Source: Haliotis cracherodii
Taxonomy: Eukaryota
Direction: 5' to 3'
DNA: 64,000 bases
Assembly (NCBI RefSeq): GCF_022045235.1
Contig: NW_027266275.1
Span: 24,180,001-24,244,000 of the forward strand
Part shown: positions 4,741 to 64,000 of the stretch, in pieces
Layout: every line of letters begins with the position of its first letter
Position numbering within the stretch: position 1 is the stretch's first letter
Translations under genes and position numbers: made by a program
Notes under the pieces: model-generated
Told to the model about the DNA's origin: nothing
Database searches by the model: none
Seen by the model: only the letters and a program-made list of their open reading frames with translations

Positions 4741-6217
4741 TTTCATTTTTGACAAATTGACCTGAACCTCTGAACATAGATAACTGTATGTATGATCACA
4801 ACGGTTTGTGCAAAAAAATCCCATGGCCCAAGGAATGCAATTTCCCCTAAAGTTTGTCATGTTGGATAGTGGTGTACAAATTTGAAAAATCAAATGTTTC
4901 GACACAATGAATCTGGTTCTTTTTTGAGATTGTAAAATGGCAAGCAAATCCTTTGAGTTTTTGAGAACCCACGTGGTAATAATTCCACTTGTCTCAGATA
5001 CTCTCTGACCCGTGAAGATCCGCGGTAGAATAGGTCTTCATCAACCCATGCTTGCAGTAAAAGGCGACTATGCTTGTCGAAAGAGGCCACTAACGGGATC
5101 GGGTGGTCAGGCTCGCTGACTTGGTTGATGAATGTCATCGTATCCCAATTGCGTGGATCGATGTTCATGATGTCAATCAATGGATTGTCTGGTCCAGTCT
5201 GGATTATTTTCAGACAGCCGTAATATAGCTGGAATATTGCTGAGTGCGGCATTAAACAAAATGAAACAAACAAACGAAAACAGATACTCTCTATAAAGAA
5301 CCGCCTCCGTGGTCTAGTGGTAGAGCGTCCGCCCGGAGGGGTGAAGGTCCGGGGCAGAATGGGTTTTGTTCCATTTTTGTTTCCTCTTTTGCACTTTGTG
5401 CATTCTACCTATGACAACATCACGCACGGACTTAACCATGGTTTATTTATTCATAATGGCATCATAACAATGTGTAATAGTTTGAACATGTACGGAAACG
5501 CATTTTGAAAACTAATACCATTACTTATTTTTACATTTTAGCGATACTGATTTAACAATCCTCCCTGTACATAATAAATCATTTCTCAAGACGCTTTGTA
5601 ACGCCGTTTGACGCGTACTGAGACAAAAGGAAACCAACACCTCACATGGTCTTTTCCTTTCAAACTGCTTTGGGAACACTGGGGAATAACCAGACATCTC
5701 ACCAAAGCTTGTGTGCCGAACATACAAAATGCAAGAAAACACTTGTTTGAATTAAGGTAAATATGTTTTTAGTAATACAAAAATTGGCATCTTCAGAATA
5801 CTTCCGCGTCTTTATCCTAATTAAACATCAGGTCTTTTAAAAACATGGAATGAGGTGCGTCAAGTAAATATGATTAGGAAGAAGGCGATCACAGTTACGT
5901 TTGCCTTTTGATATGGTTCATGGAGTGAGTGAGTGAGTTTAGTTTTACGCCGCTCTTAGCAATATTCAAGCAATATCACGGCGAGGGACACCAGAAATGG
6001 GCTTCACACATTGTACCCATGTCGGGAATCGAACCCGAGTCTTTGGCGTGACGAGCGAACGCTTTAACCACTAGGCTACCCGACCGGCCCTATGTTACAT
6101 GGAATGTGGATAATTGTAGCGTATATTATGTTCCAGCACCGATGATGCCAGCCAAAATATGCACTTATGGATGTGAGTAGACATTTTACGATGTGATTTT
6201 TCTTCATATATATCTAA

Positions 6218-10274: not shown

Positions 10275-10541
10275 ACCCGTGAAGATCGGGGTAGAATTGG
10301 TCTTCAGCAACCCATGCTTGCCCGAAAAGGCGACTATCCTTGTCGTAAGAGGCGACTGATGGGATCGGGTGGTCAGGCTCGCTGACTTGGTTGATGCATG
10401 TCATCGTATCCCAATTGAATTGGTTGATACTCATGATGCCAATCACTGCATTGGTTGGTCCAGATTCGATTATTAACAGACCGCCGTCATATAGCTGGAA
10501 TATTGCTGAGTGCGGCGTTAAACAACAAACCCACCAACCAA
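10275..10541 (+). mobile_element. SINE-like family B (no tRNA head; (AAAC)n tail)
   Basis: About 15 copies: about 2451-2680, 2685-2796(-), 5008-5275, 22022-22215(-), 23005-23092(-), 25248-25375, 26140-26335, 28962-29200(-), 31006-31151, 33857-34097(-), 45425-45640, 60768-60990, 62938-63200, 63351-63611. Confidence 0.85.
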
Positions 10542-17605: not shown

Positions 17606-17792
17606 NNNNNNNNNNNNNNNNNNNNNNNNNNNNNNNNNNNNNNNNNNNNNNNNNNNNNNNNNNNNNNNNNNNNNNNNNNNNNNNNNNNNNNNNNNNNNNN
17701 NNNNNNNNNNNNNNNNNNNNNNNNNNNNNNNNNNNNNNNNNNNNNNNNNNNNNNNNNNNNNNNNNNNNNNNNNNNNNNNNNNNNNNNNNNNN
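17606..17792. other. Assembly gap
   Basis: Run of N. Confidence 1.
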
Positions 17793-18197: not shown

Positions 18198-18328
18198 NNN
18201 NNNNNNNNNNNNNNNNNNNNNNNNNNNNNNNNNNNNNNNNNNNNNNNNNNNNNNNNNNNNNNNNNNNNNNNNNNNNNNNNNNNNNNNNNNNNNNNNNNNN
18301 NNNNNNNNNNNNNNNNNNNNNNNNNNNN
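18198..18328. other. Assembly gap
   Basis: Run of N. Confidence 1.
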
Positions 18329-26738: not shown

Positions 26739-27858
26739 CCTTACTGGTCACGTGACTAAATATAATGCAGGACACAGATGACACACACTTACATAACGAC
26801 GGTAATATAGGTCGCAACAGGGGGTGGGGAGGGGTGAGGTGAGGTGAGGTTGGACGGGGTGGGGTGGGGTGGGGTGGTTTATTGCCGAGTAATACGTCTT
26901 CTGGTCAGCAGGCATATGCTCTGTGTGTGTGGTTGAACATGAAAGGCGTTAGGGTATTTAGCTGATTGTGCACCTTGGCTTAATGGAGGTACTGTCGGAC
27001 AGATCTGTCACTGTGCCAGCACTCCACTGCAGATGGAAATCGGCTTTCCCTGATTCTATAGACAGACCTGGGCTGACAGCAGCGTGATGCTTATGGGTAC
27101 ATATAATATTTACATATGTAATCATATGAAGAGAATGTATTCCTAATCTAGTTCAATAACATGCTTATCCCAATGAGAAATAAAATGACAGAGAATATTG
27201 AATGTCACTTCTCTCTTAACGTTACTCGATACATGACAAAAGCCACAGCATGATTGTGGGAACAAGGTCTTTATGAGACATCAGCATCAACACACACAAG
27301 CTAAACTGACCGGCAAAAAAATCATACCGAGTTTGTTTTTTATGTAACTTAAAATTAAAAGAACTGTTGTTAAATTGGATTATGTCTGATCAATCATTCC
27401 TGTAAGTTATCCCCTACCATGAAATGTAAATTTGAGCGAAAAACTATAAAATATAAGATGTCTAAGATACCCATCGGCAGTTGTCTACTATCCGAATTTT
27501 GTTTCTTAATTTAAGAAAATTTAAATCAAATTATTGTAAAAAAAAATTAAAAATCATCTAGAAGTATTCTTTGAGTGCTGACTAAGCGCAAATAAAGTCA
27601 CCTTTTTATATATAATATCACTAACTAGAGATATTAATAAATGAAAATCAAACATATAATACAATTGAGAGTTATAGATTCTTTTGCCCCACAGTTTATA
27701 TGTAAGAATAATGATAATGATGGTTTATTAAGGCCACGTTAAAAAACAGTATTAATTAACATGACATGCGAACAGAATCAACAACTATACGCCTGAAACA
27801 CGTCTGGATTATTTGTATCATCATTTCTTTAAATCATTTCTAATTCTTAGTAGCATGT

Positions 27859-28386
27859 CTAACACGAAAACTTAATATTTGATGTTGTTGAATTATCAAT
27901 TACGAATCTCCCAGCGTTAGGTGTAGCAATACATCGCCCGCTTACAGACAAATTAGCAAATAGCCAATCGGACACATAGCCGTTGGGTTTATAACCTGAT
28001 ATTTCATTCATGAGCTGGCCACTACTTGGCTGTGAACCAACCGACACATCTATAAATCGTACATTGGATGAAGTTCCATTGATCCCTGCCGGCATGGTCC
28101 AGAAAACAAAACGAGGACAAAAACCTTCAAGACGAATGTTTTGAAACACCACATTATTCATGTTGATGACCTTGACGTTTCCAGCCAGATCGAACACTGC
28201 ATTGTTTCTACTAAGCATACCACAGTCGCGGTCGTGGAATGTACACCAGTCCGTGTGAATGACGTCGATGTTGCTGATGCTGACTCTGTGAAGGTCACGT
28301 TCCGTCCACCAGCCTGTTTGGAATACGGCACCATTTTGCATTTGCCAGATGACCACTCTCTGTATCGTCATATCGTTGTTGTACAC
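27859..28386 (-). CDS. GH49-like hydrolase A, exon 2
   Basis: Acceptor ttttccttatag, then VYNNDM...VVIWQMQNGAVFQTGWW...IDVIHTDW. The joined protein is 477 aa. Confidence 0.88.
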   Translation of the reverse strand: MYNNDMTIQRVVIWQMQNGAVFQTGWWTERDLHRVSISNIDVIHTDWCTFHDRDCGMLSRNNAVFDLAGNVKVINMNNVVFQNIRLEGFCPRFVFWTMPAGINGTSSNVRFIDVSVGSQPSSGQLMNEISGYKPNGYVSDWLFANLSVSGRCIATPNAGRFVIDNSTTSNIKFSC

Positions 28387-29357
28387 CTATAAGGAAAACT
28401 AACATTCAAAAAGTCGTTCAAGATATTCAAGGAACCATCGAGCAAGACTGGAATCTCTGAGTAAAAGGTGACTTAGCGACATATGACTCTTGCTTAGAAG
28501 TTGTTTGATCACCTTTACAACATTCAAGGATTCAGTAAAGCTTTCAAAAATGTTTATGGAGGACATTTCCAAATTTGACGCATCAGTGACAAAAATGATG
28601 TCCGATGCAGTTCCCTGTTTTGACTTGTTCCATAATGTTCCCGTGTTTTTCAGGTGAACATCGACTTGCCCGTGCATGTGTTTGTGACGGGTGCCGCAGG
28701 ATACGCTCACATTTTCGCGAACACCTGGTATCATTACTATTTGATAGTGATTCATAAACACATGCTCAGGATATAATGTGAATCGTACAATCGACTCTGT
28801 TTTATGCAGAGATTTCTATTGGATATGGAAAGGGTTGTGTTGCTTTATTTATATGTGCAATGGATAACTAAGTGTACGATGGTTTTGAGTGAGGTCAAAC
28901 TAATCCTAAGAAACCTATTCTTGATTATAGTTAGATTATAATGTTTTTTTTGTTTTTTTTATTGTTTGTTTGTTGTTCAACGCCGCACTTAGCCGCACCG
29001 ACGGCGGTCTGTAAATAATCGAGTCTGAATCAGACTATCCAGTGATTGACATCATGCCCATCAATCCACGCATTTGGGATACGATGACACTCATCAACAA
29101 AGTCAGCGAGTCTGACCACCCGTTCCCGTTTGTCCCCTCTTACGACAAGCATAGTCACCTTTTACAGCAAGCATGGGTTGCTGAAGACCTATTCTACCCA
29201 GATTGTAATGTTTGTAGGGGCTATAGTAATGTTTAATCTGTAGCGCTATTAACGAAGCTAAAACATAAATAATACAGATGGAATTGATGAATTGATAATT
29301 TATATGCTATCATATCTGAAACACACAGAGTTGTTAGATGTTAAAGTCTGGCATTAC

Positions 29358-30263
29358 CTTGAGTGAGTCGTCATTGGCCATAATGAACACGTCCTCCACC
29401 AAACCACCAACGCCCATCTCAATACCGTCAGTATTGTAAGGCCAGGCGCCCACCATCTTGACCTGTTTAATGATGTTGTTGGGACTTTGGGCGAATATGA
29501 AAAACTGTTGGGGATCACTTAACGTTATGCCTTCAATTGTGTGATTAGTGCCTTGTGCAGTGTTGATCAACGACCACTGAAATCGCTTGTCATGAAATTT
29601 GTACTTGCGGCCTGAACAGATCCCTCTTCCATGGAACTTGACCTTTGTGTTATCTGTGGTGATGAACCCTCCATCAACGAAAGCTCCAGCACTGATGTAA
29701 ACCTCTTTTATACTCGAGTTCAATCTGACTTGACCGTCAAGATAATGCACACCGACGTCAAAGAACATTACCGAGGGGTCACTCTTAGAAGGAACGTCTC
29801 TCTCCAAAGGTTCTGCAAAGATCAGCAGCTTGTCGACTATGTCGGACTTCCAACTGCCGTAGTCATTATCAAACTCTACAGACATCATAGTAGAATTCCG
29901 AGTCACTGTAAACCTAGCCGTCTTGTTCCCCACCCTACTGCAGGCGTACCCGTAACTTACCGGGCGAACCAGACACTGACTGAAGTCCTTCTGTGTCCTG
30001 ACCTCAACGATTACCGGACCACGACTGAATGCAAAAGACGACCATGACACGGAGCGGTTGGGATGGACGTAGTGGTTCTCGATATGTCTGTGGTTCGAGG
30101 TCGTCTTGTAAGTGAAGGTACCCAATAATGGATCCCCGAGACCTACCAATACCTCATACTTATCTGATGACTCCATGGTCGGAGGTGCAGGGTATATGAC
30201 CAGCTCGGCCATATATCCGCCCATCATTGTCATTACTAGGTAGATGACTGGACACACATCCAT
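29358..30263 (-). CDS. Secreted GH49-like glycoside hydrolase A, exon 1
   Basis: Hydrophobic N-terminus, then VYISAGAFVDGG, GRGICSG, WPYNTDG, FIMANDDSLK. Donor AAG|GTAATG, phase 0. Confidence 0.88.
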
Positions 30264-31599
30264 GCTGTTTTAGTACACTATGGTGAATGGCTACCTGCTA
30301 TGTTATTTATCAAACGTTTACACTCCACGATAGCTGTTATCGTGTTGCTTGATATTGACAGGATCAGATAACGAATATATCATGTCATATATGACGTACA
30401 TTTCAACATCTCAAATGCACTGTGTCTGTTGATAGGGTATGAGACATATGGGTATATCTCGTCGGCCAAAATGTTTCGTGGGCTCCTGGAAGAAAACAAA
30501 ACACAAAGATCACACTGTCAATGTTTGCTAGATTTGAAGACGTGTGTGTTGAAGCAATATCCTTGGATGGTTTGATAATATTCTCATTTATTTAAAGAAA
30601 CGTTGTTCCCTTCGCTGAAACCAAAGAACATCAACACCTTATGAGTTGGTTTAGATTCAACATTTTTAGCTATACTGGAAGGCAAAAGAAAGTCGCCATG
30701 GGCATTATTATACAGAGAATGGTCGATATGCGTTTTGGCGACCTGTTCAGAAATGGTTTCTGGTGGTATGACCTTGGACATTCACACATAGTTCAGTTCG
30801 AGCAAATCATGCAAAATGCACGTGCAAATTGTTGCTTCGCCGACATGCTTTCTCTTGTGTTCACATCCAGCAGACAGTTGAGGCAATAGCTGCCAATGAT
30901 GCTGGCTGATGCACTGCCATTGTATAAACAATGTCATGTTTGACGGCAGCCTGCAAATATTAGAAGTTAGTCCGTATTGTTGATTCCTCGCTTCTATAGT
31001 GGCACTTGTCATCGTATTCCAATTGCGTGGATCGATGCTCACGATATCAATCACTGGATTGTCTGGTCCAGACTCGATTATTTACAGACCGCCGTCATAT
31101 AGCTGGAATATTGCTGAGTGCGGCGTTAAACAACAAACCAACCAACCAACCATAGTCGCACTGACATCCTGATGGAATTACTTTGGGTGACTATTGGGCT
31201 GTCATGGGACCCCTGTCGTGAAACTTGTTCCCGTACAATGCATTGTAAACTCTGTCTTTGTTCTGATCTCGACTGTCACGGGACTGTCTGAGAAAGACGA
31301 TTTCCTGTTAGGTTCAACAGACAACGCATCTTTCACTCTGTTCTTTGACTCTGTAATGTAAGTGAATTGAATACCTTTCAAACCACATTGTGATGCATCG
31401 ACGTGGACGTTATGACCCAGGGACGCCTGATGTGGATGGGTACATATCTAAATCGCAAACGGCTTCGGAAATGTAAATACCTAACATCAAAGCCGTGAAC
31501 GTGTGACAAAGAGCAGCTATAGCATTAGGAGGGATCACACACTGTCATAACTGAAATTGCTCGTTGTCTCAACTGAAAAGTCTCGTTGTCTGCCAAAAC

Positions 31600-33340
31600 C
31601 ATGCATCGGTACTATCCACTTTTGACATGACTCTTTAACCTGAAGACATGTCCATGACATGTACTGGATTCCAAAGCTCTATAAAGATCCGTACAAAGAG
31701 GGGTATATTGCTGGGTACAACAAATGTGCCACCAAATCCCTGTCTCAAAGATTAACCACAATCCTTAATACAATCAAGGAAGGACTTTCATTATATTCAC
31801 AGGGAGTGTTTGAGACAAGAGGAATGAATACCATGTGGGTTCTCAAAAACTCAAATCACGATGACCTTTTATAATCTCAGAAAAGAACTAGGTTCAATTA
31901 TGTCAAAGTATTTGAGTTTTCGGTGGATGACTTTGTGTGCTGGCGATTGGTGCCTCAATCTGGGAGTTTCGAATTCCGGATGGGACTCAACCATAAAAAT
32001 TTCTAGAATTTGTACTTCACTAAGGAAGTGTTATCCCAAATATCACAATTGTTACCTATGACGGTCGTACAAGGTGACTGAATAGATTGTATGGACAGGT
32101 TCAGTGAACTGGTTTGTCGTGTGTCATTGTACCCAGACAGCGTGGATCATAACACTTAATATCAATCACTGGACTCTCCGGACCAAACTCCATTATTTAC
32201 ATTATTAACGAGGTAATAAACCATCAAATATATCGCATGTATACTTCCGACATTTCAGATAATGATCTGATGGTCATATTCCATCAGTGTAACTACTATC
32301 TTAAGGACAACTGAATATCGCATTTCATCATTATTTCCCTTATCGGAATATTGCAAATATTCATATGGTTGTGTCTATATTATCTGAACTAAAGTATGTC
32401 TAGATATCATCTGTTGTGCATTAGATGGTTGTTCAAAATTGAACAACAGGCACTTTCTATGATTTATTCATACTTTTAAGATCATATATCTATTATTGCT
32501 ATATATCCGGGGGCAAGGGTGACCCAGTCGTCTAAGGCGCCGCGATTCGCTGTGCAGAGTTGCGTCCCTTAGGCACGCCAGAAACCTATGATTGTGGGTT
32601 TGAATCCCGGTTCGAACCGATTATGTTTCTAGGTTTGTCAGAAAAGAACTAGGTTCAATTATGTCAAAGTATTTGAGTTTTCGGTGGATGACTATGTGTG
32701 CTGGCGATTGGTGCCTCAATCTGGGAGTTTGGGTTCGAATTCCGAATGGGACTCAACCATAAAAAGTTCTAGAATTTGTACTTCACTAAGGAAGTGTTAT
32801 CCCAAATATCACAATTGTTACCTATGACGGTCGTACAAGGCGACTGAATAGATTGTATGGACAGGTTCATCTCTTTCATATTAAGATCTATGCATAAATG
32901 TTCTGAGTGACACAAAACTGTCCACAAGAATGTATTACAAGAGGGATAACTTCAACTTTCCAATGGTCAACTTTCCCTTTATGTCCAGCCTTTAAAGAGC
33001 CTCTTACGACTCTTGGTAAACAATTTTTTATCCGGTCTCAGCATTCAAAGGCCTCAGTTTAAAAAAAGTTTTATGGTACATATGTGGAGGATATTTCCAA
33101 ATGTGACGTATTAGTGAAAAACTTAATGTCCAATGCTATTCCATTTTTTTACTTGTACCATATATTACCCTGTTTTGTTCAGATGAACAACTGACTTGTC
33201 TTTCCATGTGTTAGTGACATCTGCCACACGTGGTATCATCACTATTAATATCGATTCATAACACATGCGTAATTGTACAATGGCTCTGCTTTTAGCAGAG
33301 AATTTCTTACGATTATGGTAAGGGTTTTGTCGTTTTATGG
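31600..33340 (+). mobile_element. Interrupted Penelope-like (Naiad/Chlamys-type) remnant
   Basis: MYWIPKLYKDPYK...MWVLKNS at 31659-31874. It resumes near 32870 (KLSTRMYYKRDNFNFPMVNFPF) after inserted and duplicated repeats. Confidence 0.7.
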
Positions 33341-34453
33341 TTTTACCGGTATGGTGCTGACAAACTAAGGATCAGAAACGTCATGAATCTGCGATTCGGG
33401 TCCACACTGGTATAATTAATACCTTCTGCTGCAGCCACTTTCTACGCGGAAATATATTTCTTCGCAAATTCTACAGGGTACAAGGTTACTGTATTAGTAA
33501 GTGAAGAAAACGTGTGACATGTTCTTTTTATGTTTTGCATGTTTTGTTAGGGTTAATGTAAAAAACAGGTGTGCTTAAGTTGGAAATCGAATCCACGTGC
33601 ACGTTTACGACATGACGAGATAAACGCTTAACGGCTGGGCAAGCTGAATATGTACATTGGTATACTGCAGCGGTCGTTTTGGAGAAGCCGTTCCAGCTGC
33701 GGATGAACTCGAGTGCATGAAGGATAAACGCAAATGAAGATGCATGTGACAGCCTTTAGATGATATTACCACTGAACGTATTCTCCGATTGTCATAATAT
33801 ACATCATATAAGCAACGTCCACCTGGGAGATATCAGCTGTGTCAACTGGGTCAAATTTGTTTGTTTGATGTTTAACGCCTCACTCAGGAATATCCAGCTT
33901 TATGACGGCGGTCTGACAATCCAGTGATTGACATTATGAGCATCGATCCACGCAATTGGGATATGATGACATACATCAACCAAGTCAACGCGCCTGACAA
34001 CCCGATCCCGTTAGTCGCCTCTTAGGACAAGCATAGTCGCCTTTTACGGCAAGCATGGGTTGCTGAAGACCTATTCTATACCGGATCTTCACGGGTTTTA
34101 TAGGAGATAAAAAAAATCACGAAGGATGGTAACTCATTTGGGACCTGCCCTTTGTGTTAGATATTAACCATGAAACTTTCGTGGAATTCAACATTTGTTA
34201 TCCACGCATTGAAATTCGTTTATTTAGTTTGGGCTAGGCTACCAAGTGGTTGATAACATGAACAACAATTCAACCCAACGGGATATGTTGACACATAAAC
34301 ATCCAGGTCAAACATTGTGACCACTAGATCTTTATTGCATTGGCTCGTGCGACAAGTATGGGTTATGTGGACATATTCTACCGAGCAATCCTCACGAGAA
34401 CTTTTGCAAATATTGCAGTGTGTTTTGATGTTTTAAACGACTTTCCATTAATA

Positions 34454-34991
34454 TCATCCAATGATAGGACTAGTACCGCATACAATGTTGATGTTGTGTG
34501 TCGTATGCGAGTCAACCGAAAAGTGTCCTGCACCTGTGTTACTGACACAGTGGCCGCCACACCGGAGATTGACAAACTACAAGTTCTGGATAGGAGCTCT
34601 TGGTGTGCCTGCTATAATGTTATGCATGCTGCTCGATACGGATTCAACATAGATGTTCTCGAAACGCAGATTGCTAACTTTTCCCACAGCTCCGTTGTAG
34701 AGTTTCCGCTCTACCAGTCTCGGACATTCTCCCTCAATTCGGATGTCCTTGAGAATGGTGTCATCGACGTGAAACTCGTGGGTGTGGCCGGACACGGTGA
34801 AGACAAGCAGCATTAGGCTGAAGATGACAGTTATCTCCCTTGTAAGCGCACCAATCCATATGTATAATGTCCACGTCGGAGACCCGGATGTCATGAACGT
34901 TCCTGGACTTGCACCATCCGAACTGGAAGATGGCTCCGAACTGCATCTGCCACACGACTGTTCGCCTGATAATCAAGCCGGTATGGAACAC
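34454..34991 (-). pseudogene. GH49-like pseudogene (exon 2)
   Basis: Acceptor ttttttcag. Colinear with the paralogs down to PIIG-stop, but has a 1-nt frameshift near 34807 and an in-frame TAG at 34577-34579. No intact exon 1 upstream. Confidence 0.85.
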
Positions 34992-36213
34992 CTGAAAAAA
35001 ATGATATATATGGTAACAAGATGACTTTATCATAATCTAAAGGCAAATACCTAAGGGTTTTTTAATCAGGCACACTCGCCTATTGATAAAATATGTTGTA
35101 GCAGGCTGCTGAAGATCCGGGGTAGAATAGGTCTTGATGAGCCAAGTAGATGGTCAAGGTCGTCTCCAACGTCAGCCTGAAAACAGTTTGTTTATATCTT
35201 AACTCGACAAGGAATTGACTGATAACAATCTTATGATAACAGTAGTAGGTTATGTTGAGGTCATGCAGCATGTGCTGTATTTACATACGTTGCTATATTG
35301 CCCTCAGGAATGTTCTTGAAATACTTGTCATTGAGTTTGGAAGGTCGGATTCACGCTCAATGTCGTACACTCAAAAATGAACAATGTTCATAATAACTCA
35401 ACAAATATATAGAGTTTATTTCAGTCAGATCAAATTTAGTAAATACCTTCCTTAGTGTGGGGAATTGACTCTGCTTGGTTTTAAGAGGCCTTCATTCAAG
35501 ATCAAGGCCACACGGTGATGAAATTAAACCGGACGTGCATATAACGTTCCTATTAATGTAGCTAGCGGTATGGGATTTGCTGTTTTAAAGTCGTCATAGA
35601 ACGTGTGGGATGAATTGAAACGACGTTTTCAACCTCTTCGAAGTCGTGTGATGTTGGCCAAGCTGCAGCAGGCAAATCTGGAATGACGTCCCCGAGGCTT
35701 CCTGAATTCTCTGTTTTGTCCTTATTCGGAGTCATTGCCAGGCAAATGTCTTTGCAAATGGTGGTCACTTTGACTTTGACTTGTTAACTATCCGAAACCT
35801 ACTTCGAAACCTTGGTCGTGCACGTGCACCTGAGTTCACATTCTTATTCCGATATCCTGCTTTTTGAATATTACATATTGATATGACTCAATAATCGATG
35901 TGTTTGTTTATTCATTTCACTTGGGTATCAGTGATGTATGGGTACTTTCTTCCAAAATTAGACCACCCTCACGTACCACGTGACAGTCGAGACAGTAACT
36001 ATATTTGAATAGATAAAGTTCCGTTTTTTCAGACAGATAGTGCAAAGGACCAGATGTTTCTTTTTATCTCTACAGAATGTAGATACAATATGTTTTGAAT
36101 AAGTGAAAAAATGTTATGGTTGCACTGATTAGAAGGGATGGGTCTCATGCGTCACAATCTCTGCAGATTCATATTAAGTTATTAGTGCCACAGTCAGCCG
36201 GTGCCGCCACAGC

Positions 36214-37125
36214 ATGGTCGGTCTCTGTGTTTGGGTGGTTCTCTTCACCCTCGCCAACGAGGCGACGGGAAGCGTCATCATATACCCACACGCCAGTGGT
36301 CCACCAGCTTCCAACAAATTCAAGGTGTATGTGAGTCAGGGTGGAAGAAAACATGACAGTTTCACTTACATTACCACCTCTGACAAACGTTCCCACGAAA
36401 CATCATCTGCACACCCAGGACGATCGATGTCGTTCACGTCGTTTTCCTTTACTGGCGGTGCCGTGACAGTGGAGGTCCACACCCAGCGCGACTTCCACAA
36501 CTGCATCGTCAGACCCAAAAGCTACAACTACCACTGCCGCAGAACAGGAACCAAGGTTGCCCAATTCACCGTGTCCAACACCGAGAAGTGGATGTCCGTA
36601 GAATTTGACTATGACTACGGCAGCAGTAATGGAGGCCCAGACATAACAGACAGGCTCCTTGTGTTCGCAGATCCGCCTGAGACACATAAGCCAAACAAGA
36701 ACGACAACTCTGTTCTGTATTATGACGTAGGGATACACAATCTGCATGGCCCGAAACAATTGGATTCTCACATAAAAGAAGTATATTTAGCACCAGGGGC
36801 GTATGTTCAAGGAGGATTTAAGACCACTGGGAATCAACCAGTGAAGATCTATGGCAGAGGAATACTCTCCACTGCTACATACACGTGGCACGATCCAAGA
36901 TTTCAGTGGGCAATGATCGACATTGATAAGGGACATTCTCACGTACTTGAGGGTATCATCATGGTTGATCCTGTGAAATACTTCTACCGCGGACTGAGCG
37001 ATCACAATACCGTCCGTTATGTAAAGATGGTTGGGTCGTGGGCCTATAATTCCGATGGTATTGGTATTGGTCATGATGGACTGGTCGAGGACTGCTTCAT
37101 CTCGGCAAACGATGATGCACTGAAG
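36214..37125 (+). CDS. Secreted GH49-like glycoside hydrolase B, exon 1
   Basis: Signal peptide MVGLCVWVVLFTLANEATG, then VYLAPGAYVQGG, GRGILS, WAYNSDG, FISANDDALK. Donor AAG|GTTTGT, phase 0. Confidence 0.9.
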
Positions 37126-37384
37126 GTTTGTGAATTTTGTTATGTAGACATTTCTTGGATCTTTGCTTGAGCAGTGAATTAGCATTAGCAATACCGAAAG
37201 GGCGTTGATAGGTGTCTCTCTCACACAATGCAAATCGTGTTCTATTATCAAAATCAAACAATCTCGGGAATATGTGATAGTCTGGAGACTCCGAATTATG
37301 AAGTATTGTGGAAAACTTTTACATGATATTAAATAACTATTTTTTAGCAATGATTGGTGAAGTCGATATTTTGACGTATAGATA

Positions 37385-38425
37385 AACAGGGTTTTTCTTG
37401 AAACAGTACTGACGGATCAACATGGGTTTTCTGGGAAAAGTACTAACCAAGTGAAGCTGGTTTTACTGGGAATATAAACGACAGGTGAAAAGGGTTTTAC
37501 TGGGGAAAGATAAACGACAGGTTAAGAGGGTTTTACTGGGAAAGTAAACGACAGGTGAACAAGAATTTTCTGGGAAAATAAACGACAGGTAAAAAAATGT
37601 TTAATGGGAAAATGAACGACGGGTGAAAGGGGTTTTACTGTGAAAAAAACCGACGGGTGAAAGGGGTTTTATTGGGAAAATAAACGACAGGTCAACAGGA
37701 CTTTACTGGGAAAATTAAGGACAAGTCAACACGGTTTTACTGGGAAAATAAACGACATGTGAAGAGGGTTTTACTGGGCAAATAAATGACAGGTGAACAG
37801 GTTTTAAAAAAAATAAACGTCAGGTGAACAGGTTTTTACTGGGAAAATAAACGTCAGGTGAACACGGTTTTACTGGGAAAAGTACTGACGGATGAACAGG
37901 GTTTCACTGAGAAAAGTACTGACGGACGAACATGGTTTTACTGGGATCTGTACTGATGAATAAACATGGTTTACTGGGAACAGTAGCGACAGGTGAACTG
38001 GGTTTTACTGGGAAAATAAATGACAGGTGAACATGGTTTTACTGGGATAATAAACGACAGGTCAAGAGGGGGCGTACTGGGAAAAATAAACGACATGTGA
38101 AGAGGGTTTTACTGGGAAAATAAAGGACAGGTGAACAGGGGTTTTACTGGGAAAATAAACGACAGGTGAACAGGGTTTTAGTAGGAAAATAAAGGACAGG
38201 TGAACAGGGGTTTTACTGGGAAAATAAACGACATGTGAAGATTGTTTTACTGGGAAAATAAACGACAGGTGAAAACGATTTTACTAAGAAAACTACTGAT
38301 GGGTTAACAGGGTTTCATTGGGAAAGGTAATGACGGACAAAAATGGTTTTACTGGGATCGGTACTGGTGAAGAAACGTGGTTTTACTGGGAACAATAGCG
38401 ACAGGTGAAATGGGTTTTACAAGGA
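37385..38425. repeat. About 34-bp minisatellite inside the GH49-B intron
   Basis: Unit gggttttactgggaaaataaacgacaggtgaaca, about 30 diverged copies. Confidence 0.9.
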
Positions 38426-38577
38426 TATCCACTATCAGGACGACCAGGGTTTCCCCGTATCTTTAATTAATTTTCAATTACACCCAACAAATAATCTAGA
38501 ACGTGGGATGGTGCGGCAAATGTTACTCCCATTCGAGAAATTTAGAAACCCAACTGGAGCGTGCTTATTGTATTCAG

Positions 38578-39117
38578 GTATACACAGACAACATGGTGGC
38601 ACGGAGGGTCGTCATCTGGCAGATGCAGAACGGGGCTGTCTTCCAGAACGGATGGTGGAGCGGCAGAGATATGAAGAAAGTCAGGATAAGTGACATCGAC
38701 GTCATTCACACCGACTGGTGCACTTTTAAAGGTTCCAACTGTCACATCAGCGACAACGACGCAGTCTTCGACCTGGCTGGTAACACAAAGCATTTCGCCA
38801 TGAATGATATCGTCTTCACCAACATTAGGGTAGAAGGGACTTGTCCACGTATTGTGTATTGGAAGATGGCCAACGGGGCATCGGGGGCGGCTTCCAACGT
38901 CCACATTATAAACCTGTCCGTGGAATCCCAGCCTGGCCACGACAGTCTCCATAACGAAATAGCAGGGAATTCTGGAGGCAGAGTCACCAACTGGCAGTTC
39001 AACAACTTCAAGATTGGCGGCAAATGCATCTCCGGTGCAGCCCAAGCAGACTTTCATATCGATGCCAACACCACCAGCAATATCCGGTTTAATTGCGGGG
39101 GAGCTATCATTGGATAA
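38578..39117 (+). CDS. GH49-like hydrolase B, exon 2
   Basis: Acceptor tgtattcag, then VYTDNM...VVIWQMQNGAVFQNGWW. The joined protein is 483 aa. Confidence 0.9.
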   Translation, partial: VYTDNMVARRVVIWQMQNGAVFQNGWWSGRDMKKVRISDIDVIHTDWCTFKGSNCHISDNDAVFDLAGNTKHFAMNDIVFTNIRVEGTCPRIVYWKMANGASGAASNVHIINLSVESQPGHDSLHNEIAGNSGGRVTNWQFNNFKIGGKCISGAAQADFHIDANTTSNIRFNCGGAIIG

Positions 39118-42100
39118 TGAGATGATGGTAATGAAACGTGGTTTGAATACATTTGGCTGCAACATTTCAGGCGTGAGTAAAGCTTTCAAAAAGTGTTATG
39201 GAAGACGTGGAGGATATTTCCAAATGTGTCGCATCAGTGACAAACATTATTCTCGATGCAATTCCTTATTTTAATTTGTACCAGGTGTTTCCGTGTCTTT
39301 CCAGGTGGACAATTGACTTACCTTTGCATGTGTTTGTGTCAAGTGTGCAACCGGTGGACAGGATAGGCTCACCTTTTCGCGAACACCTGGTATAAACACA
39401 TGCTTGTGATGAAAACAATGGTCAGAATTATACAATGGACTCTGCTTACAGAAGAGATTACTTTTGATTATGAAAATGGTTTTGTCCATTTTTATTTATT
39501 TGAATATAGAACTGAAAATTCAAACCTTAAAATTGAACTGTTTCACTAGTTTGAGTAAAAAAATGAGGCTCGGTTTATATGTCATCGTTATCTCATCACA
39601 GATTTGTTCACACTATGTAACTCCGTGAAATATTGATGATGGTTGACCTTGAATGTCACAGAGTGGTGATGCGTTGTAAATTGAAGTAATAAACACATAA
39701 GGAGAGATTAGGCACCATCCAACCTGTAGGGATTCCTGGTCAGAAAAAGACCCTCATTGCTTCATGCTTTTCGCAACATTTGATCAGATGGACAGGTTCT
39801 GTTGCATGCCATGTAGCTGGTCGCATGTCTGGCGTGGAGTGCTGGTCATGCTTTCAATCACTGGTTCGTCTTGTCCACACTCGAATACTTACAGACCGCC
39901 GTGATATAACTGATATTGGCGTTAAACAGCTTTCACTCACTTAAACATCAACTACCTTATTGCATCTGAACTATTTCATTTTTTATGTTTTAATCACTGA
40001 AAAAAATCTTACCAAATCGTTTATCTCATAAGACTTTTTTGAAAATTACCTTCTGAAGCATAATACCATGGTGGTCTTTTGTTTTCATTTCAAGATGACA
40101 GACGTCTGGTCAACAACTCATATAACGGTTTCAAACAGTTCCGTCAGGCGTCCAACGTCACACGAATTTCTAGGAGTGAGTGAATCGGGTTTTACGCCGC
40201 TTTTAGAAATATTCTAGCTTCACACATTGTACCCATGTCGGGAATCGAACCCGGGTCTCCGGTGTGACGAGCGAACGATTTAAACACAAGGCTACCCGGC
40301 CGCCCTTGAGTGTCTAGGAAGACATTGAATGTCACAGAGTGGTGATGTGTTAGAACATACAGTGTCAGCTGAGAACATATGACTCAGGTGTCGCAGCCTA
40401 ATCATGACATATTGTCAATATATAGTTTTCAATTTAGGAGTGCTAAGCATTTGCTAAGGCGTATGATAGAGGCGTATAGTGAGGTGAAGGTAAAATGGGG
40501 TTTTAACGTCGCGTCGAAGATATTTGCACTTATATAGCGATGTGCATGCACACGTGTGTGTGTGTGTATGTGTGTGTCTGCTTGTACTTGTCCGGGCTGA
40601 TGCCGATTTATAGTGCTATCCCACTGAGATACCATGCCTCAGTTTATCATGAATACCCCACAGAATACTGAGCCGACCAGTCCCTTAATGCCGAGCGCCA
40701 TCTTTTAACGTCTTTTGGTATGACGCGTCCGGGGATCGAACCCCGGACCCTACGCTCTCCGGGCGGACGCTCTACCACTAGACCACCGAGAAGCCCGACG
40801 TGTTGCAGGTCTCAGACGTTTACCGCTTCGGTGAAACCCACGAGCACGGGTATGGTGCTGACAAACCTAGAAACATAATCGGGACGAACCGGGATTCGAA
40901 CCCACAATCATCGTCTTTGCACATTAAACAATAACTGAAGCCGAAACAAATTCATATTTTTCAGAATTAATGACGATGAAGCCAACAGAAAGTGATAGAT
41001 AAGTGTTGGGTGTTTTGTGTGTAGGTACCGGAGGTGTAGATGACGGCAACATTCGGAACATTTTCTGTTTTACCTCTGTTGTGTTGCAATAATACAATGT
41101 CGATTCATTCTGGCTGTGCCTGGTATCGCTATTTTGGACACACAAGGGACCATTATTCTTGGTATCTTTACTATTATATGATTATGATACTATGTAGTAT
41201 TTCATCAAAACTAGACAACTTTCATTCTTCAAAATCATAATGGTTCGTAAAAAATAGAATAATCTCCGGAATTATGAAATTCTCATCAATATCTTTCGTC
41301 GTTTTGAGAATGAAAGACTTCTAAATTATTTCTTACCAGATGTTAATATCTCTTTACGGATAGCGGATAGATTCCACACTTTCCTTCACCAGCCTTTTTA
41401 AGGCAAGTTGATAAAATTAGCAAAGTTACATGACATTATGCGCGTACATGTATGTCAATAATACCAGTTAGCGTGTTTTTATGTGTTAGCGTGTTCATTG
41501 TTATATACTATTCTTAATTTCTCATTTTTTTTCTAGATATTGGAATTAAATTTTACAATGTTAATTGTTATCATTGTAATTTTCAACAGATCTATGTAGA
41601 AATATATCTTGGTTCAATAATCCCCATAGACCATGCTAGTGTTGGCGTGGCTAGCTAGGATGGAGCTGAAATGTTGCGTATTTTAAAGAAGCCCTTGAAA
41701 TACAATTCGGTAACAAAGATGGCTGGGTGCCTGGGTGACATATTAGATGCGTGTACTGTAAATGTAAAAAGTGTCACTACACATATTACATCATATACGC
41801 GACACAATACTGCATATCCTACACCTACAACCATGACAATATTCAGAGATTGTACAGATGGTCGTGGAACATCAGGGTGGCGAGATAGTTCTTGTGGTAA
41901 TGGCCCCGTGGAGATTCCAGATTAGATGGTTCCCCAGCTACTTACATTATTTTGTTTGCTGTGCGAGGTAACGAAATGGATATGGTTCCCTTCAACTAGT
42001 GCATGTAAATGTGCTAAATGAACTTATTGCTAAGTAAGTAAAAGTTGCATTGGGCCTGTTCAGCCAGGATATGTATTTCTGCTTCAAAATATAATATGAA

Positions 42101-61781: not shown

Positions 61782-64000
61782 CATGAACAGGAAAACAGCA
61801 CCTACTGACACTCAGAGTTTAATATACGAGTGATGATGCAGTTGACTACTATAGAACTTATTGCGACATAGCTTTGTATTGTATACAACGTAAGCGTGGT
61901 TAGATGTCACCCTGACCAATTTGAAAGCAGAATAAGGACGGGGGATATTTGAACATTCGAACGCTGTGTCATACCTGAGTGAGCTTCTGGGTGTACGCTG
62001 GTCCCAAGACCAGAGCTACTGCGCATGTCGGCCGTGTGTATACTGGTATGTGTGTTGGTTAAACATCGCTTGATTAAATATGCTATAATTAGATCTCTCT
62101 TTAACTTTAATTGAACATGGAAATATTATCGTGAAAGAGGCAATTGCACCTTGAAAATCATGAAAACACATTTTAATTTCAAATTTCAAATTTCAAATTT
62201 AATTTATGAAGTTCGGATAGGTTAACATGAAAGCAGTCACGCGTCTTCTCCAGATTAGTAATCTACCTCCTTTAATTTGGGAAGATAGGAAAATAGTTTC
62301 TAGGTAACGATTACGTTTTAATTCTGGTTCGTTGCTTTAGAGTAGAGTGTGAAGCGTGGTGGTGAAAGTCTCTCTGCAGACACGTGCCCGCATCACGGAA
62401 TGTACTTTCACGGCTTGAAGACCTCTGCTATTAAGGCAACATGAGCTATTAAACTCAACACCTCTTAGCGTGTTATACTCACAAAAGTAAAATTTTCGGA
62501 ATTTGGGGTAAATGAATTGCCATGCAGAGAGAAAGCTTGGAAAGTTTGTTTTTTTATTTACCTGTCATCTTCTGGTAATAGGCCTTAGGAAAACACGTTT
62601 AAAGGCGAATGAGTAACGTGTCAAGTAGTTTTTAGCAATCTTAATGTTTATTCAGTAGTGCGCTCATGAACAGTTATGAAGAACGCATGCACTGTTTTCA
62701 TAGAACATCGCGATAATAGGACCGGCTGGCAAATTTTGCTTCGTGTACATTTACCAGAACGTAGACTTCAGAAGGTCGGTTTTCTCAGCAAAGCAGAATT
62801 ATTCATAAAAATCCTCTTTCATACTAACATGTCAACAATTCTTGTATTCATCCACATTCATGATCATCGCCGTCATTTAAACCCATAATCATTATTATCA
62901 TTACTATCACCACAGCCGACATCCCGATACAAACGGCCGGTGACGATTCCGGGGTAGAATAGGTCTTTAGCTACCCATTCTTGCCGTTAAAGGCGACTAT
63001 GCTTGTCGTAAGAGGCGACTAACAGGATCGGGTGGTCAGGCTCGCTGACTTGGTTGATGCATGTCATCGTATCTCAATTGCGTGGATGGAAGGTGATTAT
63101 GTCAATCACTGGATTGTCTGGTCCAGACTCGATCATTTAGAGGCCGCCGTCATATAGCTGGAATATTACTGAGCGCAGCGTTATACAACAAACAAACAAT
63201 GTAAACAACATTACCATTACCTATCTCTTCCCAATCACCATGACCATTTGTGTCAGCACCACAAGGATCATAATCGCCACCCCCGCAATATTGATCGTCC
63301 GAAATTCTTTTATTTTTATGATCATAATTTTATATAATCCGAGTGTACAACCCCGTGAAGATCCGGGGTGGAATAGGTCTTCAGGGACCCTGCTTGTCGT
63401 AAGAGACGAATATGCTTGTCGTAAGAGGGGGCTAACGGAGCGGAATGACAGGCTCGCTGACTTAGTTGATGCATATCATCGTATCCCAATTGCGTGGATC
63501 GATGCTCATGATGTCAATCACTGGATTGTCTGGTCCAGACTCGATTATTTACAGACCGCCGTCATATAGCTGGAATATTGCTGGGTGCGGCGTTAAACAA
63601 CAAACAAACAAGCCAATAAACAAACGAATGTATTAACACTCGACCGTCAGTCACTTATATATCTTGTGTCGGTAAGTTAAGACCCGAACTAGAACCAGAC
63701 GGCTATCTCTAAGTTGAGTAGTAAGATAAGAACGGCTTCCGGAAGTGACCACCGGAAGTGTTTGACCAATATGTACATCTTAGTTTACATGCCGTAGCTG
63801 TTGGAGTGATTAGTAATAGATATGTACTTATTTGTATATGAACCGTGAGAAGCTAATCGACACGCTTCCGTATGCATGACGAGTAACATTCCAATGAGCG
63901 GTTGTTAGCAAGCGTCTGAGGTGACTTGTGGCCAGATTGCTGTGTGCCCATGTCTCGCCTCTGTCTTCTACAGTCTATGTCATCAGTTCCCGATAACCAA

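What the first reader, a model, noticed from the sequence alone, without database searches (positions are those of the whole stretch)
27859..39117. Cluster of secreted GH49-like glycosidases in an animal genome: probable horizontal acquisition
Seen: two intact paralogs (477 and 483 aa) with signal peptides, YxAPGAYV, GRGI, WxYNxDG and ANDDxLK motifs, spliceosomal introns and host SINEs around them. Established: GH49 (dextranase, isopullulanase, sulfated-arabinan arabinanase; inverting beta-helix with a DG...DD Asp triad) is mainly a bacterial and fungal family. Inference: a microbial gene domesticated and amplified for digesting algal or biofilm polysaccharide, with unknown substrate.
Basis: partly seen in the sequence, partly recalled or inferred. 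Interest (0 to 1): 0.8.

Follow-up and report, generated by a model that had tools for sequence, protein, structure and literature searches.

The report
Mollusc-wide GH49-type glycosidase gene cluster
The black abalone window holds two intact, head-to-head genes for secreted GH49-type sugar-cleaving enzymes plus two decayed copies; the family occurs in gastropods, a chiton and a pearl oyster but in no other named animal, and its closest relatives are genes of single-celled eukaryotes, not bacteria.

Summary
Observation confirmed. Gene A (minus strand, 477 aa) and gene B (plus strand, 483 aa) each have one phase-0 GT-AG intron directly after the NDDxLK motif. Between them lie a frameshifted exon-2 remnant and a small exon-1 fragment.

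Contigs from three studies carry gene A's intron-less form, so gene A is transcribed and spliced as predicted.

Solved-structure sequence hits, a confident model of the H. rubra orthologue and three conserved catalytic Asp place the proteins in GH49. Pfam support is only partial.

- The family is not abalone-specific. Homologues occur in Vetigastropoda, Patellogastropoda, Caenogastropoda, a chiton and Pinctada, and they form one clade. Every named animal hit is a mollusc.
- The sister group is a eukaryotic clade: the choanoflagellate Salpingoeca urceolata, the telonemid Artemidia, and metagenome contigs with GT-AG introns.
- An AU test rejects grouping the molluscs with the bacterial clade that holds a Phocaeicola plebeius DSM 17135 homologue; two distant GH49 enzymes of that strain are proven sulfated-arabinan hydrolases.

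The best reading is an ancient, stem-mollusc acquisition from, or shared with, microbial eukaryotes. Vertical descent with many losses is not excluded. The substrate is unknown.

RefSeq already calls these proteins "dextranase-like".

The parts
29358..30263 (-). Gene A exon 1 (302 codons). It encodes the signal-peptide-like N-terminus, the N-terminal beta-sandwich, the first half of the beta-helix and all three putative catalytic Asp (D279 in NTDG; D298 and D299 in ANDDSLK).
   Evidence: Pfam GH49 N-terminal domain PF17433 scores 28.8 bits against a cut-off of 21.3. 99% identical to residues 1-302 of H. rufescens P0046.
28387..29357 (-). Gene A intron (971 nt, phase 0, GT..AG).
   Evidence: Sequence. 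Contigs of three runs from three studies skip exactly 971 nt here: X4 record 9, X6 record 16 and X7 record 23. The joint is ambiguous by 2 nt because both sides read GT.
28941..29270 (.). Interspersed host repeat (~260 bp) inside gene A's intron.
   Evidence: At least 13 copies in the window at 73-88% identity. Summed contig depth exceeds 50,000 in the runs laid. No Rfam family matched.
27859..28386 (-). Gene A exon 2 (175 codons plus stop): the second half of the beta-helix and the C-terminal cap.
   Evidence: Isopullulanase beta-solenoid repeat PF18783 at E 2.8e-4. 98% identical to residues 303-477 of P0046.
31244..31453 (-). Decayed exon-1-like fragment (about 40% identity to residues 22-96 of family members).
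34457..34997 (-). Exon-2 remnant of a third paralogue, frameshifted near 34800-34804, with no exon 1 upstream. It corresponds to the C-terminal part of H. asinina P0008 (77-78% identity).
   Evidence: (PF18783 at 32.4 bits against a cut-off of 30.2).
36214..37125 (+). Gene B exon 1 (304 codons): signal-peptide-like N-terminus, beta-sandwich, first half of the beta-helix, and D281 (NSDG) plus D300 and D301 (ANDDALK).
   Evidence: 88% identical to H. rubra P0001 residues 14-304.
37126..38577 (+). Gene B intron (1452 nt, phase 0, GT..AG). Most of it is a 34-nt minisatellite spanning 37381-38417.
   Evidence: The junction is supported only by the orthologue model. No reads were laid on gene B.
38578..39117 (+). 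Gene B exon 2 (179 codons plus stop).
   Evidence: PF18783 at E 1.3e-3 and PF03718 at E 0.017. 91% identical to P0001 residues 305-483.

Best explanation
The window holds two functional members, and two decayed ones, of a mollusc-wide family of secreted GH49-type glycoside hydrolases. Each protein is an N-terminal beta-sandwich followed by a right-handed beta-helix. By homology with dextranase and isopullulanase, three Asp (one in the xDG motif, two in NDD) would carry out inverting hydrolysis of a polysaccharide; this is inferred. The most likely role is endo-cleavage of an algal or biofilm glycan in the gut of grazing molluscs. The substrate is unknown; sulfated arabinan and alpha-glucans are the known GH49 substrates. 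The family entered, or was already present in, the mollusc stem before chitons, bivalves and gastropods diverged. It gained one phase-0 intron right after the catalytic NDDxLK motif and has since evolved by duplication and decay on one chromosome. Its closest relatives are genes of microbial eukaryotes. The favoured origin is therefore an ancient lateral acquisition from, or shared with, a protist lineage, not a recent bacterial transfer into abalone.
For: Shown.
- Intact two-exon genes.
- Gene A's spliced form occurs in contigs from three studies.
- Only GH49 chains hit by sequence: 6nzs at 2e-20, 3wwg/1wmr at 1e-17 and 1ogm at 1e-15, with the xDG and NDD Asp aligned.
- The AlphaFold model of orthologue P0001 has pLDDT 89. 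Its top seven Foldseek matches are all GH49, with E down to 3e-23 and TM 0.77; the next hits are GH87 and GH28, at E 3e-7 and weaker.
- The same exon break occurs in all four two-exon paralogues of this genome, all on contig C12.
- Named homologues come from Haliotis, Patella, Lottia, Littorina, Batillaria, Pomacea, the chiton Liolophura and the bivalve Pinctada, and from no other animal phylum. This holds in two word searches and in an exhaustive profile search of 1.84 billion representatives.
- The mollusc clade has SH-aLRT 100, and molluscs + the protist-type clade has 99.
- The protist-type set includes S. urceolata and Artemidia motanka and metagenome contigs whose copies are split by GT..AG introns.
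- The protist-type set shares the mollusc Cys pairs.
- Molluscs + the bacterial clade is rejected by an AU test (p 4e-5).

Inferred: secretion, catalysis, the digestive role and the direction of transfer.
Against: - No enzyme assay and no tissue data exist.
- Pfam support is partial: the GH49 catalytic model PF03718 stays below its cut-off.
- The runs that show splicing are only guessed to be RNA, and gene B's expression was not tested.
- The trees were built with the quick search, rooted on GH28, and contain no named fungal GH49. The AU groups were chosen after the tree had been seen.
- Molluscs + choanoflagellates is not rejected and scored 6.9 lnL units better than the free tree, which fits vertical inheritance in Choanozoa.
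An unnamed relative could therefore be a non-mollusc animal.
Confidence: 0.55

Rival explanations
1. Vertical inheritance. A GH49-type gene was present in the common ancestor of choanoflagellates and animals, survived in molluscs, and was lost in every other sampled animal lineage.
For: A choanoflagellate (S. urceolata, P0129) carries a 32%-identical homologue (E 4e-83) with the same Cys pairs. The tree that holds molluscs and the choanoflagellate group together is not rejected and has the higher likelihood (p-AU 0.567).
Against: This needs about ten or more independent losses across animals. No named non-mollusc animal homologue appeared in any search. Among named protists the family is itself patchy, with one choanoflagellate species and one telonemid. 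The intron seen in protist contig L100 lies 6-8 codons away from the mollusc intron, so no intron position is shared.
Confidence: 0.25
2. Direct transfer from a bacterium into the gastropod or abalone lineage, which is the simplest form of the reader's idea. The donor would be of the Verrucomicrobiota, Planctomycetota or Bacteroidota type that carries ~460-aa GH49-like enzymes.
For: The bacterial proteins have the same length and architecture and are 29-38% identical. A 457-aa member of this clade lies in Phocaeicola plebeius DSM 17135 (L040); Helbert et al. showed that two distant GH49 proteins of that strain are sulfated-arabinan hydrolases acting on green-algal cell wall, a plausible grazer food.
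Against: Molluscs group with the eukaryotic clade (SH-aLRT 99). Forcing molluscs together with the bacterial clade costs 135 lnL units (p-AU 4e-5). The family is also present in a chiton and a bivalve, so it is not specific to gastropods.
Confidence: 0.07
3. The proteins are not enzymes. They would act as carbohydrate-binding or structural beta-helix proteins, for example in mucus or immunity.
For: The substrate is unknown. One Lottia paralogue (P0018) has lost the first Asp, reading SAG where the others read SDG. A Pinctada model is fused to a C1q domain, though this is probably an annotation artefact.
Against: Genes A and B and most orthologues keep all three Asp and the surrounding motifs across the gastropod, chiton and bivalve sequences compared.
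Confidence: 0.08
4. Contamination or an assembly artefact of microbial DNA.
For: None found.
Against: The genes carry spliceosomal introns and host interspersed repeats, and they lie on an 82-Mb contig next to animal genes. Orthologues at 88-99% identity exist in other Haliotis genomes, and spliced transcripts were recovered.
Confidence: 0.01

Closest known systems
GH49 dextranases and isopullulanase (Penicillium Dex49A 1OGM, Arthrobacter AoDex 6NZS, Aspergillus niger isopullulanase 1WMR/3WWG)
   Same: They share the two-domain fold of an N-terminal beta-sandwich plus a right-handed beta-helix. They are the best and only strong sequence and fold matches among solved structures. The xDG and NDD Asp align.
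   Different: Identity over the aligned fold is only about 20%. The mollusc proteins are about 100 residues shorter. The Pfam catalytic model PF03718 stays below its cut-off. The mollusc proteins carry a distinct set of Cys pairs. No evidence exists for activity on alpha-glucans.
Distant GH49 endo-acting sulfated-arabinan hydrolases of Bacteroides (Phocaeicola) plebeius DSM 17135 (EDY96541.1 and EDY96565.1; Helbert et al. 2019, PMC6442616)
   Same: A 457-aa homologue from that strain (L040) has the same length and architecture, is 29% identical over the full length (E 3e-60), and shares the motifs around the Asp triad. Its substrate is a green-algal cell-wall polymer, plausible food for grazers. 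In bacteria these genes sit beside GH43 genes and sulfatases.
   Different: The mollusc clade does not group with this bacterial clade. That L040 is one of the two assayed proteins could not be checked by accession. No sulfatase or GH43 partner is known near the abalone genes.
Unnamed eukaryotic GH49-like clade (Salpingoeca urceolata P0129, Artemidia motanka P0139, and intron-bearing metagenome contigs L076, L080, L100)
   Same: It is the sister group of the mollusc clade (SH-aLRT 99). Identity is 32-39%, and the Cys pairs C93-C104, C346-C353 and C448-C471 (P0001 numbering) are shared.
   Different: The protist proteins often have N-terminal extensions or membrane anchors (P0131, P0134). Some have several short introns at other positions. 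None has been characterised.
Other glycoside hydrolases of animals attributed to lateral transfer (for example GH28 polygalacturonases of beetles and bugs)
   Same: They are beta-helix glycosidases of a mainly microbial family, fixed, intron-bearing and duplicated in a herbivorous animal lineage. This comparison rests on established knowledge and was not tested here.
   Different: The family differs (GH49, not GH28), the recipient is an ancient mollusc lineage, and the nearest relatives are eukaryotic, not bacterial or fungal.

Membership tests
Glycoside hydrolase family 49 (CAZy GH49) | Significant sequence similarity to characterised GH49 enzymes | tested here: met
   phmmer of orthologue P0001 against all PDB chains hit only GH49 chains: 6nzs at 2e-20, 3wwg/1wmr at 1e-17 and 1ogm at 1e-15.
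Glycoside hydrolase family 49 (CAZy GH49) | Pfam GH49 models above their gathering scores (PF17433 N-terminal domain, PF18783 solenoid repeat, PF03718 catalytic region) | tested here: inconclusive
   PF17433 passes for gene A exon 1 (28.8 against 21.3) but not for gene B. PF18783 passes only on the exon-2 remnant (32.4 against 30.2). PF03718 stays below its cut-off. L040, the P. plebeius homologue of the assayed distant GH49 enzymes, matches no GH49 model above cut-off and hits the GH28 model instead, so this criterion is weak.
Glycoside hydrolase family 49 (CAZy GH49) | Two-domain fold: an N-terminal beta-sandwich plus a right-handed parallel beta-helix that superposes on GH49 structures | tested here: met
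   The model of P0001 has pLDDT 89.1 and pTM 0.89. The Foldseek top seven are all GH49, with E from 3e-23 to 2e-20 and TMq 0.71-0.77; the next hits are GH87 and GH28, at E 3e-7 and weaker. This was tested on the H. rubra orthologue, not on a joined window protein.
Glycoside hydrolase family 49 (CAZy GH49) | Catalytic Asp triad (one Asp in xDG, two in NDD/DDD) | tested here: met
   D281, D300 and D301 of P0001 align with the TDG and (N/D)DD Asp of 6nzs and isopullulanase. They are invariant or nearly so in 16 gastropod proteins. They are present in gene A (NTDG, ANDDSLK) and gene B (NSDG, ANDDALK). That these are the catalytic residues of the solved enzymes rests on my own knowledge.
Glycoside hydrolase family 49 (CAZy GH49) | Inverting hydrolysis of dextran, pullulan or sulfated arabinan | not testable with these tools
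   This needs recombinant protein and assays.
Glycoside hydrolase family 49 (CAZy GH49) | Assignment by dbCAN or CAZy curators | not testable with these tools
   No dbCAN or CAZy library is available here.
Sulfated-arabinan hydrolase subgroup of GH49 (B. plebeius type) | Phylogenetic grouping with the clade that holds the B. plebeius homologue of the characterised enzymes | tested here: not met
   Molluscs branch with the eukaryotic clade. Constraining them with the 21-row bacterial clade that holds L040 is rejected (delta lnL 135, p-AU 4e-5).
Laterally acquired animal gene | Integrated in the host genome (introns, host repeats, syntenic orthologues, transcripts) | tested here: met
Laterally acquired animal gene | Absent from other animal phyla | tested here: met
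   Every named animal hit is a mollusc, in two word searches and in the exhaustive profile search. The limit is that many close hits are unnamed contigs and no animal genome collection could be scanned directly.
Laterally acquired animal gene | Recipient clade nested within a donor clade in a rooted tree | tested here: inconclusive
   Molluscs are sister to the protist-type clade, not nested in it. Grouping with choanoflagellates is not rejected, which is also what vertical descent predicts.

The most novel reading that the evidence does not exclude
A GH49-type polysaccharide hydrolase passed from a microbial eukaryote into the stem lineage of Mollusca, which would be a eukaryote-to-animal transfer. 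It was kept for over half a billion years in grazing and filter-feeding classes as an endogenous enzyme for a marine algal or biofilm glycan, such as sulfated arabinan, that animals are not otherwise known to digest. It would be part of the enzymatic basis of radular herbivory.
Probability: 0.2. Interest if true: 0.7.

Novelty: new member of a known kind. Interest (0 to 1): 0.5.

Why it matters
To my knowledge GH49 is known only from bacteria and fungi, and no paper in the searched library links it to molluscs or choanoflagellates. An old, expressed, duplicated GH49 family confined among named animals to molluscs would add a new enzyme class to the endogenous digestive toolkit of abalone, limpets, periwinkles, chitons and oysters. 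It would also point to an unstudied eukaryotic GH49 subfamily. It offers a clean test case for separating ancient eukaryote-to-animal transfer from differential loss. A defined substrate could matter for abalone nutrition in aquaculture and for processing algal polysaccharides.

Tried and rejected
- Exon joining. All searches with window sequence were run exon by exon. The natural orthologues P0001 and P0046 served as full-length proxies for the PDB search, the fold and the trees.
The source organisms and gene neighbourhoods of the unnamed close relatives (P0052, P0125-P0134) and of the Pinctada models could not be inspected.
- Shared intron positions between molluscs and protist contigs were looked for and not found. 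The L100 intron lies 6-8 codons downstream of the mollusc position.
- Rfam gave no match in 27000-40000, so the intron repeat could not be classed as a SINE.
- Literature searches returned nothing relevant for GH49 with mollusc or gastropod terms, GH49 with choanoflagellate, or dextranase with abalone. The metazoan HGT compendium text mentions no such gene.
- Reads were laid on gene A only, because one call was allowed and gene B's intron is a long minisatellite. Gene B's transcription is untested.
- Contamination was considered and rejected.
The N runs at 17606-17792 and 18198-18328 were left alone.

Full report
**What is in the window**

The window is G000:C12:24180001-24244000 of a 1.18-Gb assembly. 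That fits the H. cracherodii RefSeq proteins, which match other loci of the same contig at 97-100%.

Gene A lies on the minus strand.
- Exon 1 is 30263..29358 (302 codons, ending ANDDSLK|gtaatg).
- Exon 2 is 28386..27862 plus the stop codon (175 codons, preceded by atag).

Gene B lies on the plus strand.
- Exon 1 is 36214..37125 (304 codons, ending ANDDALK|gtttgt).
- Exon 2 is 38578..39114 plus the stop codon (179 codons, preceded by ttcag).

The two genes stand head to head, 5.95 kb apart. They are 49% identical in exon 1 and 55% in exon 2.

Two decayed copies lie between them:
- an exon-2 remnant on the minus strand at 34997..34457, frameshifted near 34800-34804;
- a short exon-1-like fragment at 31453..31244.

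Window sequence was searched exon by exon. The natural RefSeq orthologues served as full-length proxies:
- P0046 (H. rufescens) is 99% and 98% identical to gene A's two exons;
- P0001 (H. rubra) is 88% and 91% identical to gene B's two exons.

Both orthologue models switch from exon 1 to exon 2 at exactly the predicted residues.

**Transcription and splicing**

Public runs that hold about 40% of gene A's sampled words were found. That share is close to what exons alone would give. Contigs from three of these runs, from three different studies, lie on both exons and skip exactly the 971-nt intron:
- X4 record 9;
- X6 record 16, which is 1585 nt and spans the whole coding sequence;
- X7 record 23.

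The intron itself is covered only by fragments of a very abundant repeat.

There are three caveats. The runs are only guessed to be RNA. The contigs differ from the window at about 1-1.5% of positions, so they may come from sister species or alleles.

**Family assignment**

Pfam support is partial.
- The GH49 N-terminal domain model passes its cut-off on gene A exon 1.
- The isopullulanase solenoid repeat passes only on the remnant.
- The GH49 catalytic model stays below its cut-off.

Stronger evidence comes from solved structures.
- By sequence, P0001 hits only GH49 chains: AoDex 6nzs at 2e-20, isopullulanase at 1e-17 and Dex49A at 1e-15. The Asp of the xDG motif and the two Asp of NDD are aligned.
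- An AlphaFold model of P0001 has pLDDT 89 and pTM 0.89.
- The seven best Foldseek matches of that model are all GH49 entries (E 3e-23 to 2e-20, TM 0.71-0.77). Next come a GH87-type alpha-1,3-glucanase (5zru) at E 3e-7 and GH28 enzymes from E 1e-5.

The three Asp are conserved in both window genes and are nearly invariant among 16 gastropod proteins. All three lie in exon 1, just before the intron.

I therefore file the proteins as GH49-type. Activity itself is untested.

**Distribution**

In this genome the family has four two-exon copies, all on contig C12 and all broken at the same profile position:
- gene A;
- gene B;
- the P0015 gene at 18.16 Mb, which looks intact;
- a copy at 22.27 Mb with an in-frame stop at codon 225, matching a truncated 224-aa RefSeq model.

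Several fragments are present as well.

Named homologues come from these molluscs:
- Haliotis rubra, H. rufescens and H. asinina;
- Patella vulgata and P. caerulea;
- Lottia gigantea;
- Littorina saxatilis;
- Batillaria attramentaria;
- Pomacea canaliculata;
- the chiton Liolophura sinensis;
- the pearl oyster Pinctada imbricata.

RefSeq labels many of them dextranase-like.

The claim rests on absence from other animals, so I ran the exhaustive profile search. It returned 3812 hits at E up to 1e-3. Every named animal sequence among the best hits is a mollusc.

**Nearest relatives and phylogeny**

The exhaustive search revealed a set of proteins that score above all bacterial ones. It includes P0129 from the choanoflagellate Salpingoeca urceolata, P0139 from the telonemid Artemidia motanka, and many unnamed contigs. 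These proteins share the mollusc Cys pairs. Some carry membrane anchors.

JGI and ENA metagenome contigs that encode close relatives of this set are interrupted by short introns. In L100 these have clear GT..AG ends. The clade is therefore truly eukaryotic.

In a 71-row tree (IQ-TREE quick search, LG+C20), support was as follows:
- the molluscs form one clade (SH-aLRT 100);
- the protist-type rows form another (94);
- the two together form a clade (99);
- next come proteins with the full GH49 Pfam architecture;
- then a Bacteroidota group;
- then the large clade of ~460-aa proteins from Verrucomicrobiota, Planctomycetota, Lentisphaerota, Bacteroidota and Paenibacillus.

Two AU tests bear on the origin.
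- Holding molluscs together with that bacterial clade is rejected (delta lnL 135, p-AU 4e-5).
- Holding molluscs with the choanoflagellate group is not rejected, and it gave a likelihood 6.9 units higher than the free search (p 0.567).

Inside the mollusc clade the chiton sits among limpet paralogues and Pinctada sits near the base. This suggests paralogy older than the classes.

The Pinctada model P0123 consists of two exon-1-like halves that each stop at NDDAIK. This hints that the bivalve shares the exon break.

An intron of protist contig L100 lies 6-8 codons further on, so no intron position is shared with molluscs.

**Hints on function**

The bacterial clade includes a 457-aa protein of Phocaeicola (Bacteroides) plebeius DSM 17135 (L040). 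It is 29% identical to P0001.

Helbert et al. 2019 showed that two distant GH49 proteins of this strain are endo-acting hydrolases of the sulfated-arabinan cell wall of the green algae Chaetomorpha and Cladophora. I could not check by accession whether L040 is one of them.

The gene neighbourhoods fit that activity:
- In P. plebeius the gene lies between a GH43 gene and a GH36-like gene, next to a sulfatase.
- In Paenibacillus it lies between sulfatases.
- In Chitinophagaceae it is fused to a GH43 domain.

The mollusc clade is not part of this bacterial clade and is equally far from the alpha-glucanases, so its substrate cannot be read off. The carriers are grazers of algae and biofilm, plus one filter feeder. 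This makes a digestive role on an algal or microbial glycan the most economical guess, but it is inference only.

**Verdict**

The GH49 reading is supported. The horizontal-acquisition reading is only partly supported. The gene family is foreign-looking among animals, but it is ancient and mollusc-wide, its closest kin are eukaryotic, and vertical descent from a choanozoan ancestor with many losses cannot be excluded.

My estimates are:
- about 0.55 for the whole best reading: secreted GH49-type hydrolases of a mollusc-wide family, acquired in the mollusc stem from, or shared with, microbial eukaryotes, and probably digestive;
- about 0.25 for vertical descent with loss;
- under 0.1 for a direct bacterial donor.

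This left the organisms of the unnamed relatives unknown.

Noticed in passing
window 37381-38417: Gene B's intron is mostly a minisatellite: a 34-nt unit (GGTTTTACTGGGAAAATAAACGACAGGTGAACAG) in about 25-30 copies at 75-77% identity, with a 104-nt higher-order period.
   Followed up: partly
window 28941-29270, with copies at 5024-5221, 10285-10530, 33912-34078, 62952-63624 and elsewhere: A ~260-bp interspersed repeat has at least 13 copies in the window at 73-88% identity. Its summed contig depth is above 50,000 in the runs laid, so it is very abundant, perhaps as transcript. No Rfam match was found, and its class is undetermined.
   Followed up: partly
L111 (G000:C12:22271000-22276500), codon 225 of exon 1: The paralogue at 22.27 Mb has an in-frame TAG (…RIG*CTVNF…). 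RefSeq XP_071107376.1 is the resulting 224-aa product. This is a pseudogene or a truncated allele.
   Followed up: yes
P0123 and P0051 (Pinctada imbricata models): P0123 (776 aa) strings together two exon-1-like halves, each ending NDDAIK, and then a long Lys/Thr/Gln-rich repeat. P0051 joins a partial GH49-like part to a C1q domain. Both look like gene-model artefacts over a tandem cluster.
   Followed up: no
L030-L033, L035-L037, L039 (Bacteroidota; for example L031:3992-6367): In Chitinophagaceae and relatives the GH49-like module is fused to a C-terminal GH43 domain, giving a ~790-aa protein. A GH115-like gene and a GH28 gene sit beside it. This looks like a dedicated arabinan-type degradation locus.
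   Followed up: partly
P0124 (1281 aa, unnamed NCBI contig): A bacterial-type protein carries two GH49-like modules separated by a middle domain.
   Followed up: no
P0018 (Lottia gigantea LOTGIDRAFT_231772), alignment A2 columns 296-301: This limpet paralogue reads HHSAG where the others read YNSDG. It lacks the first putative catalytic Asp and may be inactive or repurposed.
   Followed up: no
P0134 and P0131 (unnamed protist-type proteins): Some members of the eukaryotic sister clade are membrane-anchored. P0134 has a C-terminal transmembrane helix plus a tail, and P0131 has an N-terminal anchor. The mollusc forms are soluble.
   Followed up: no
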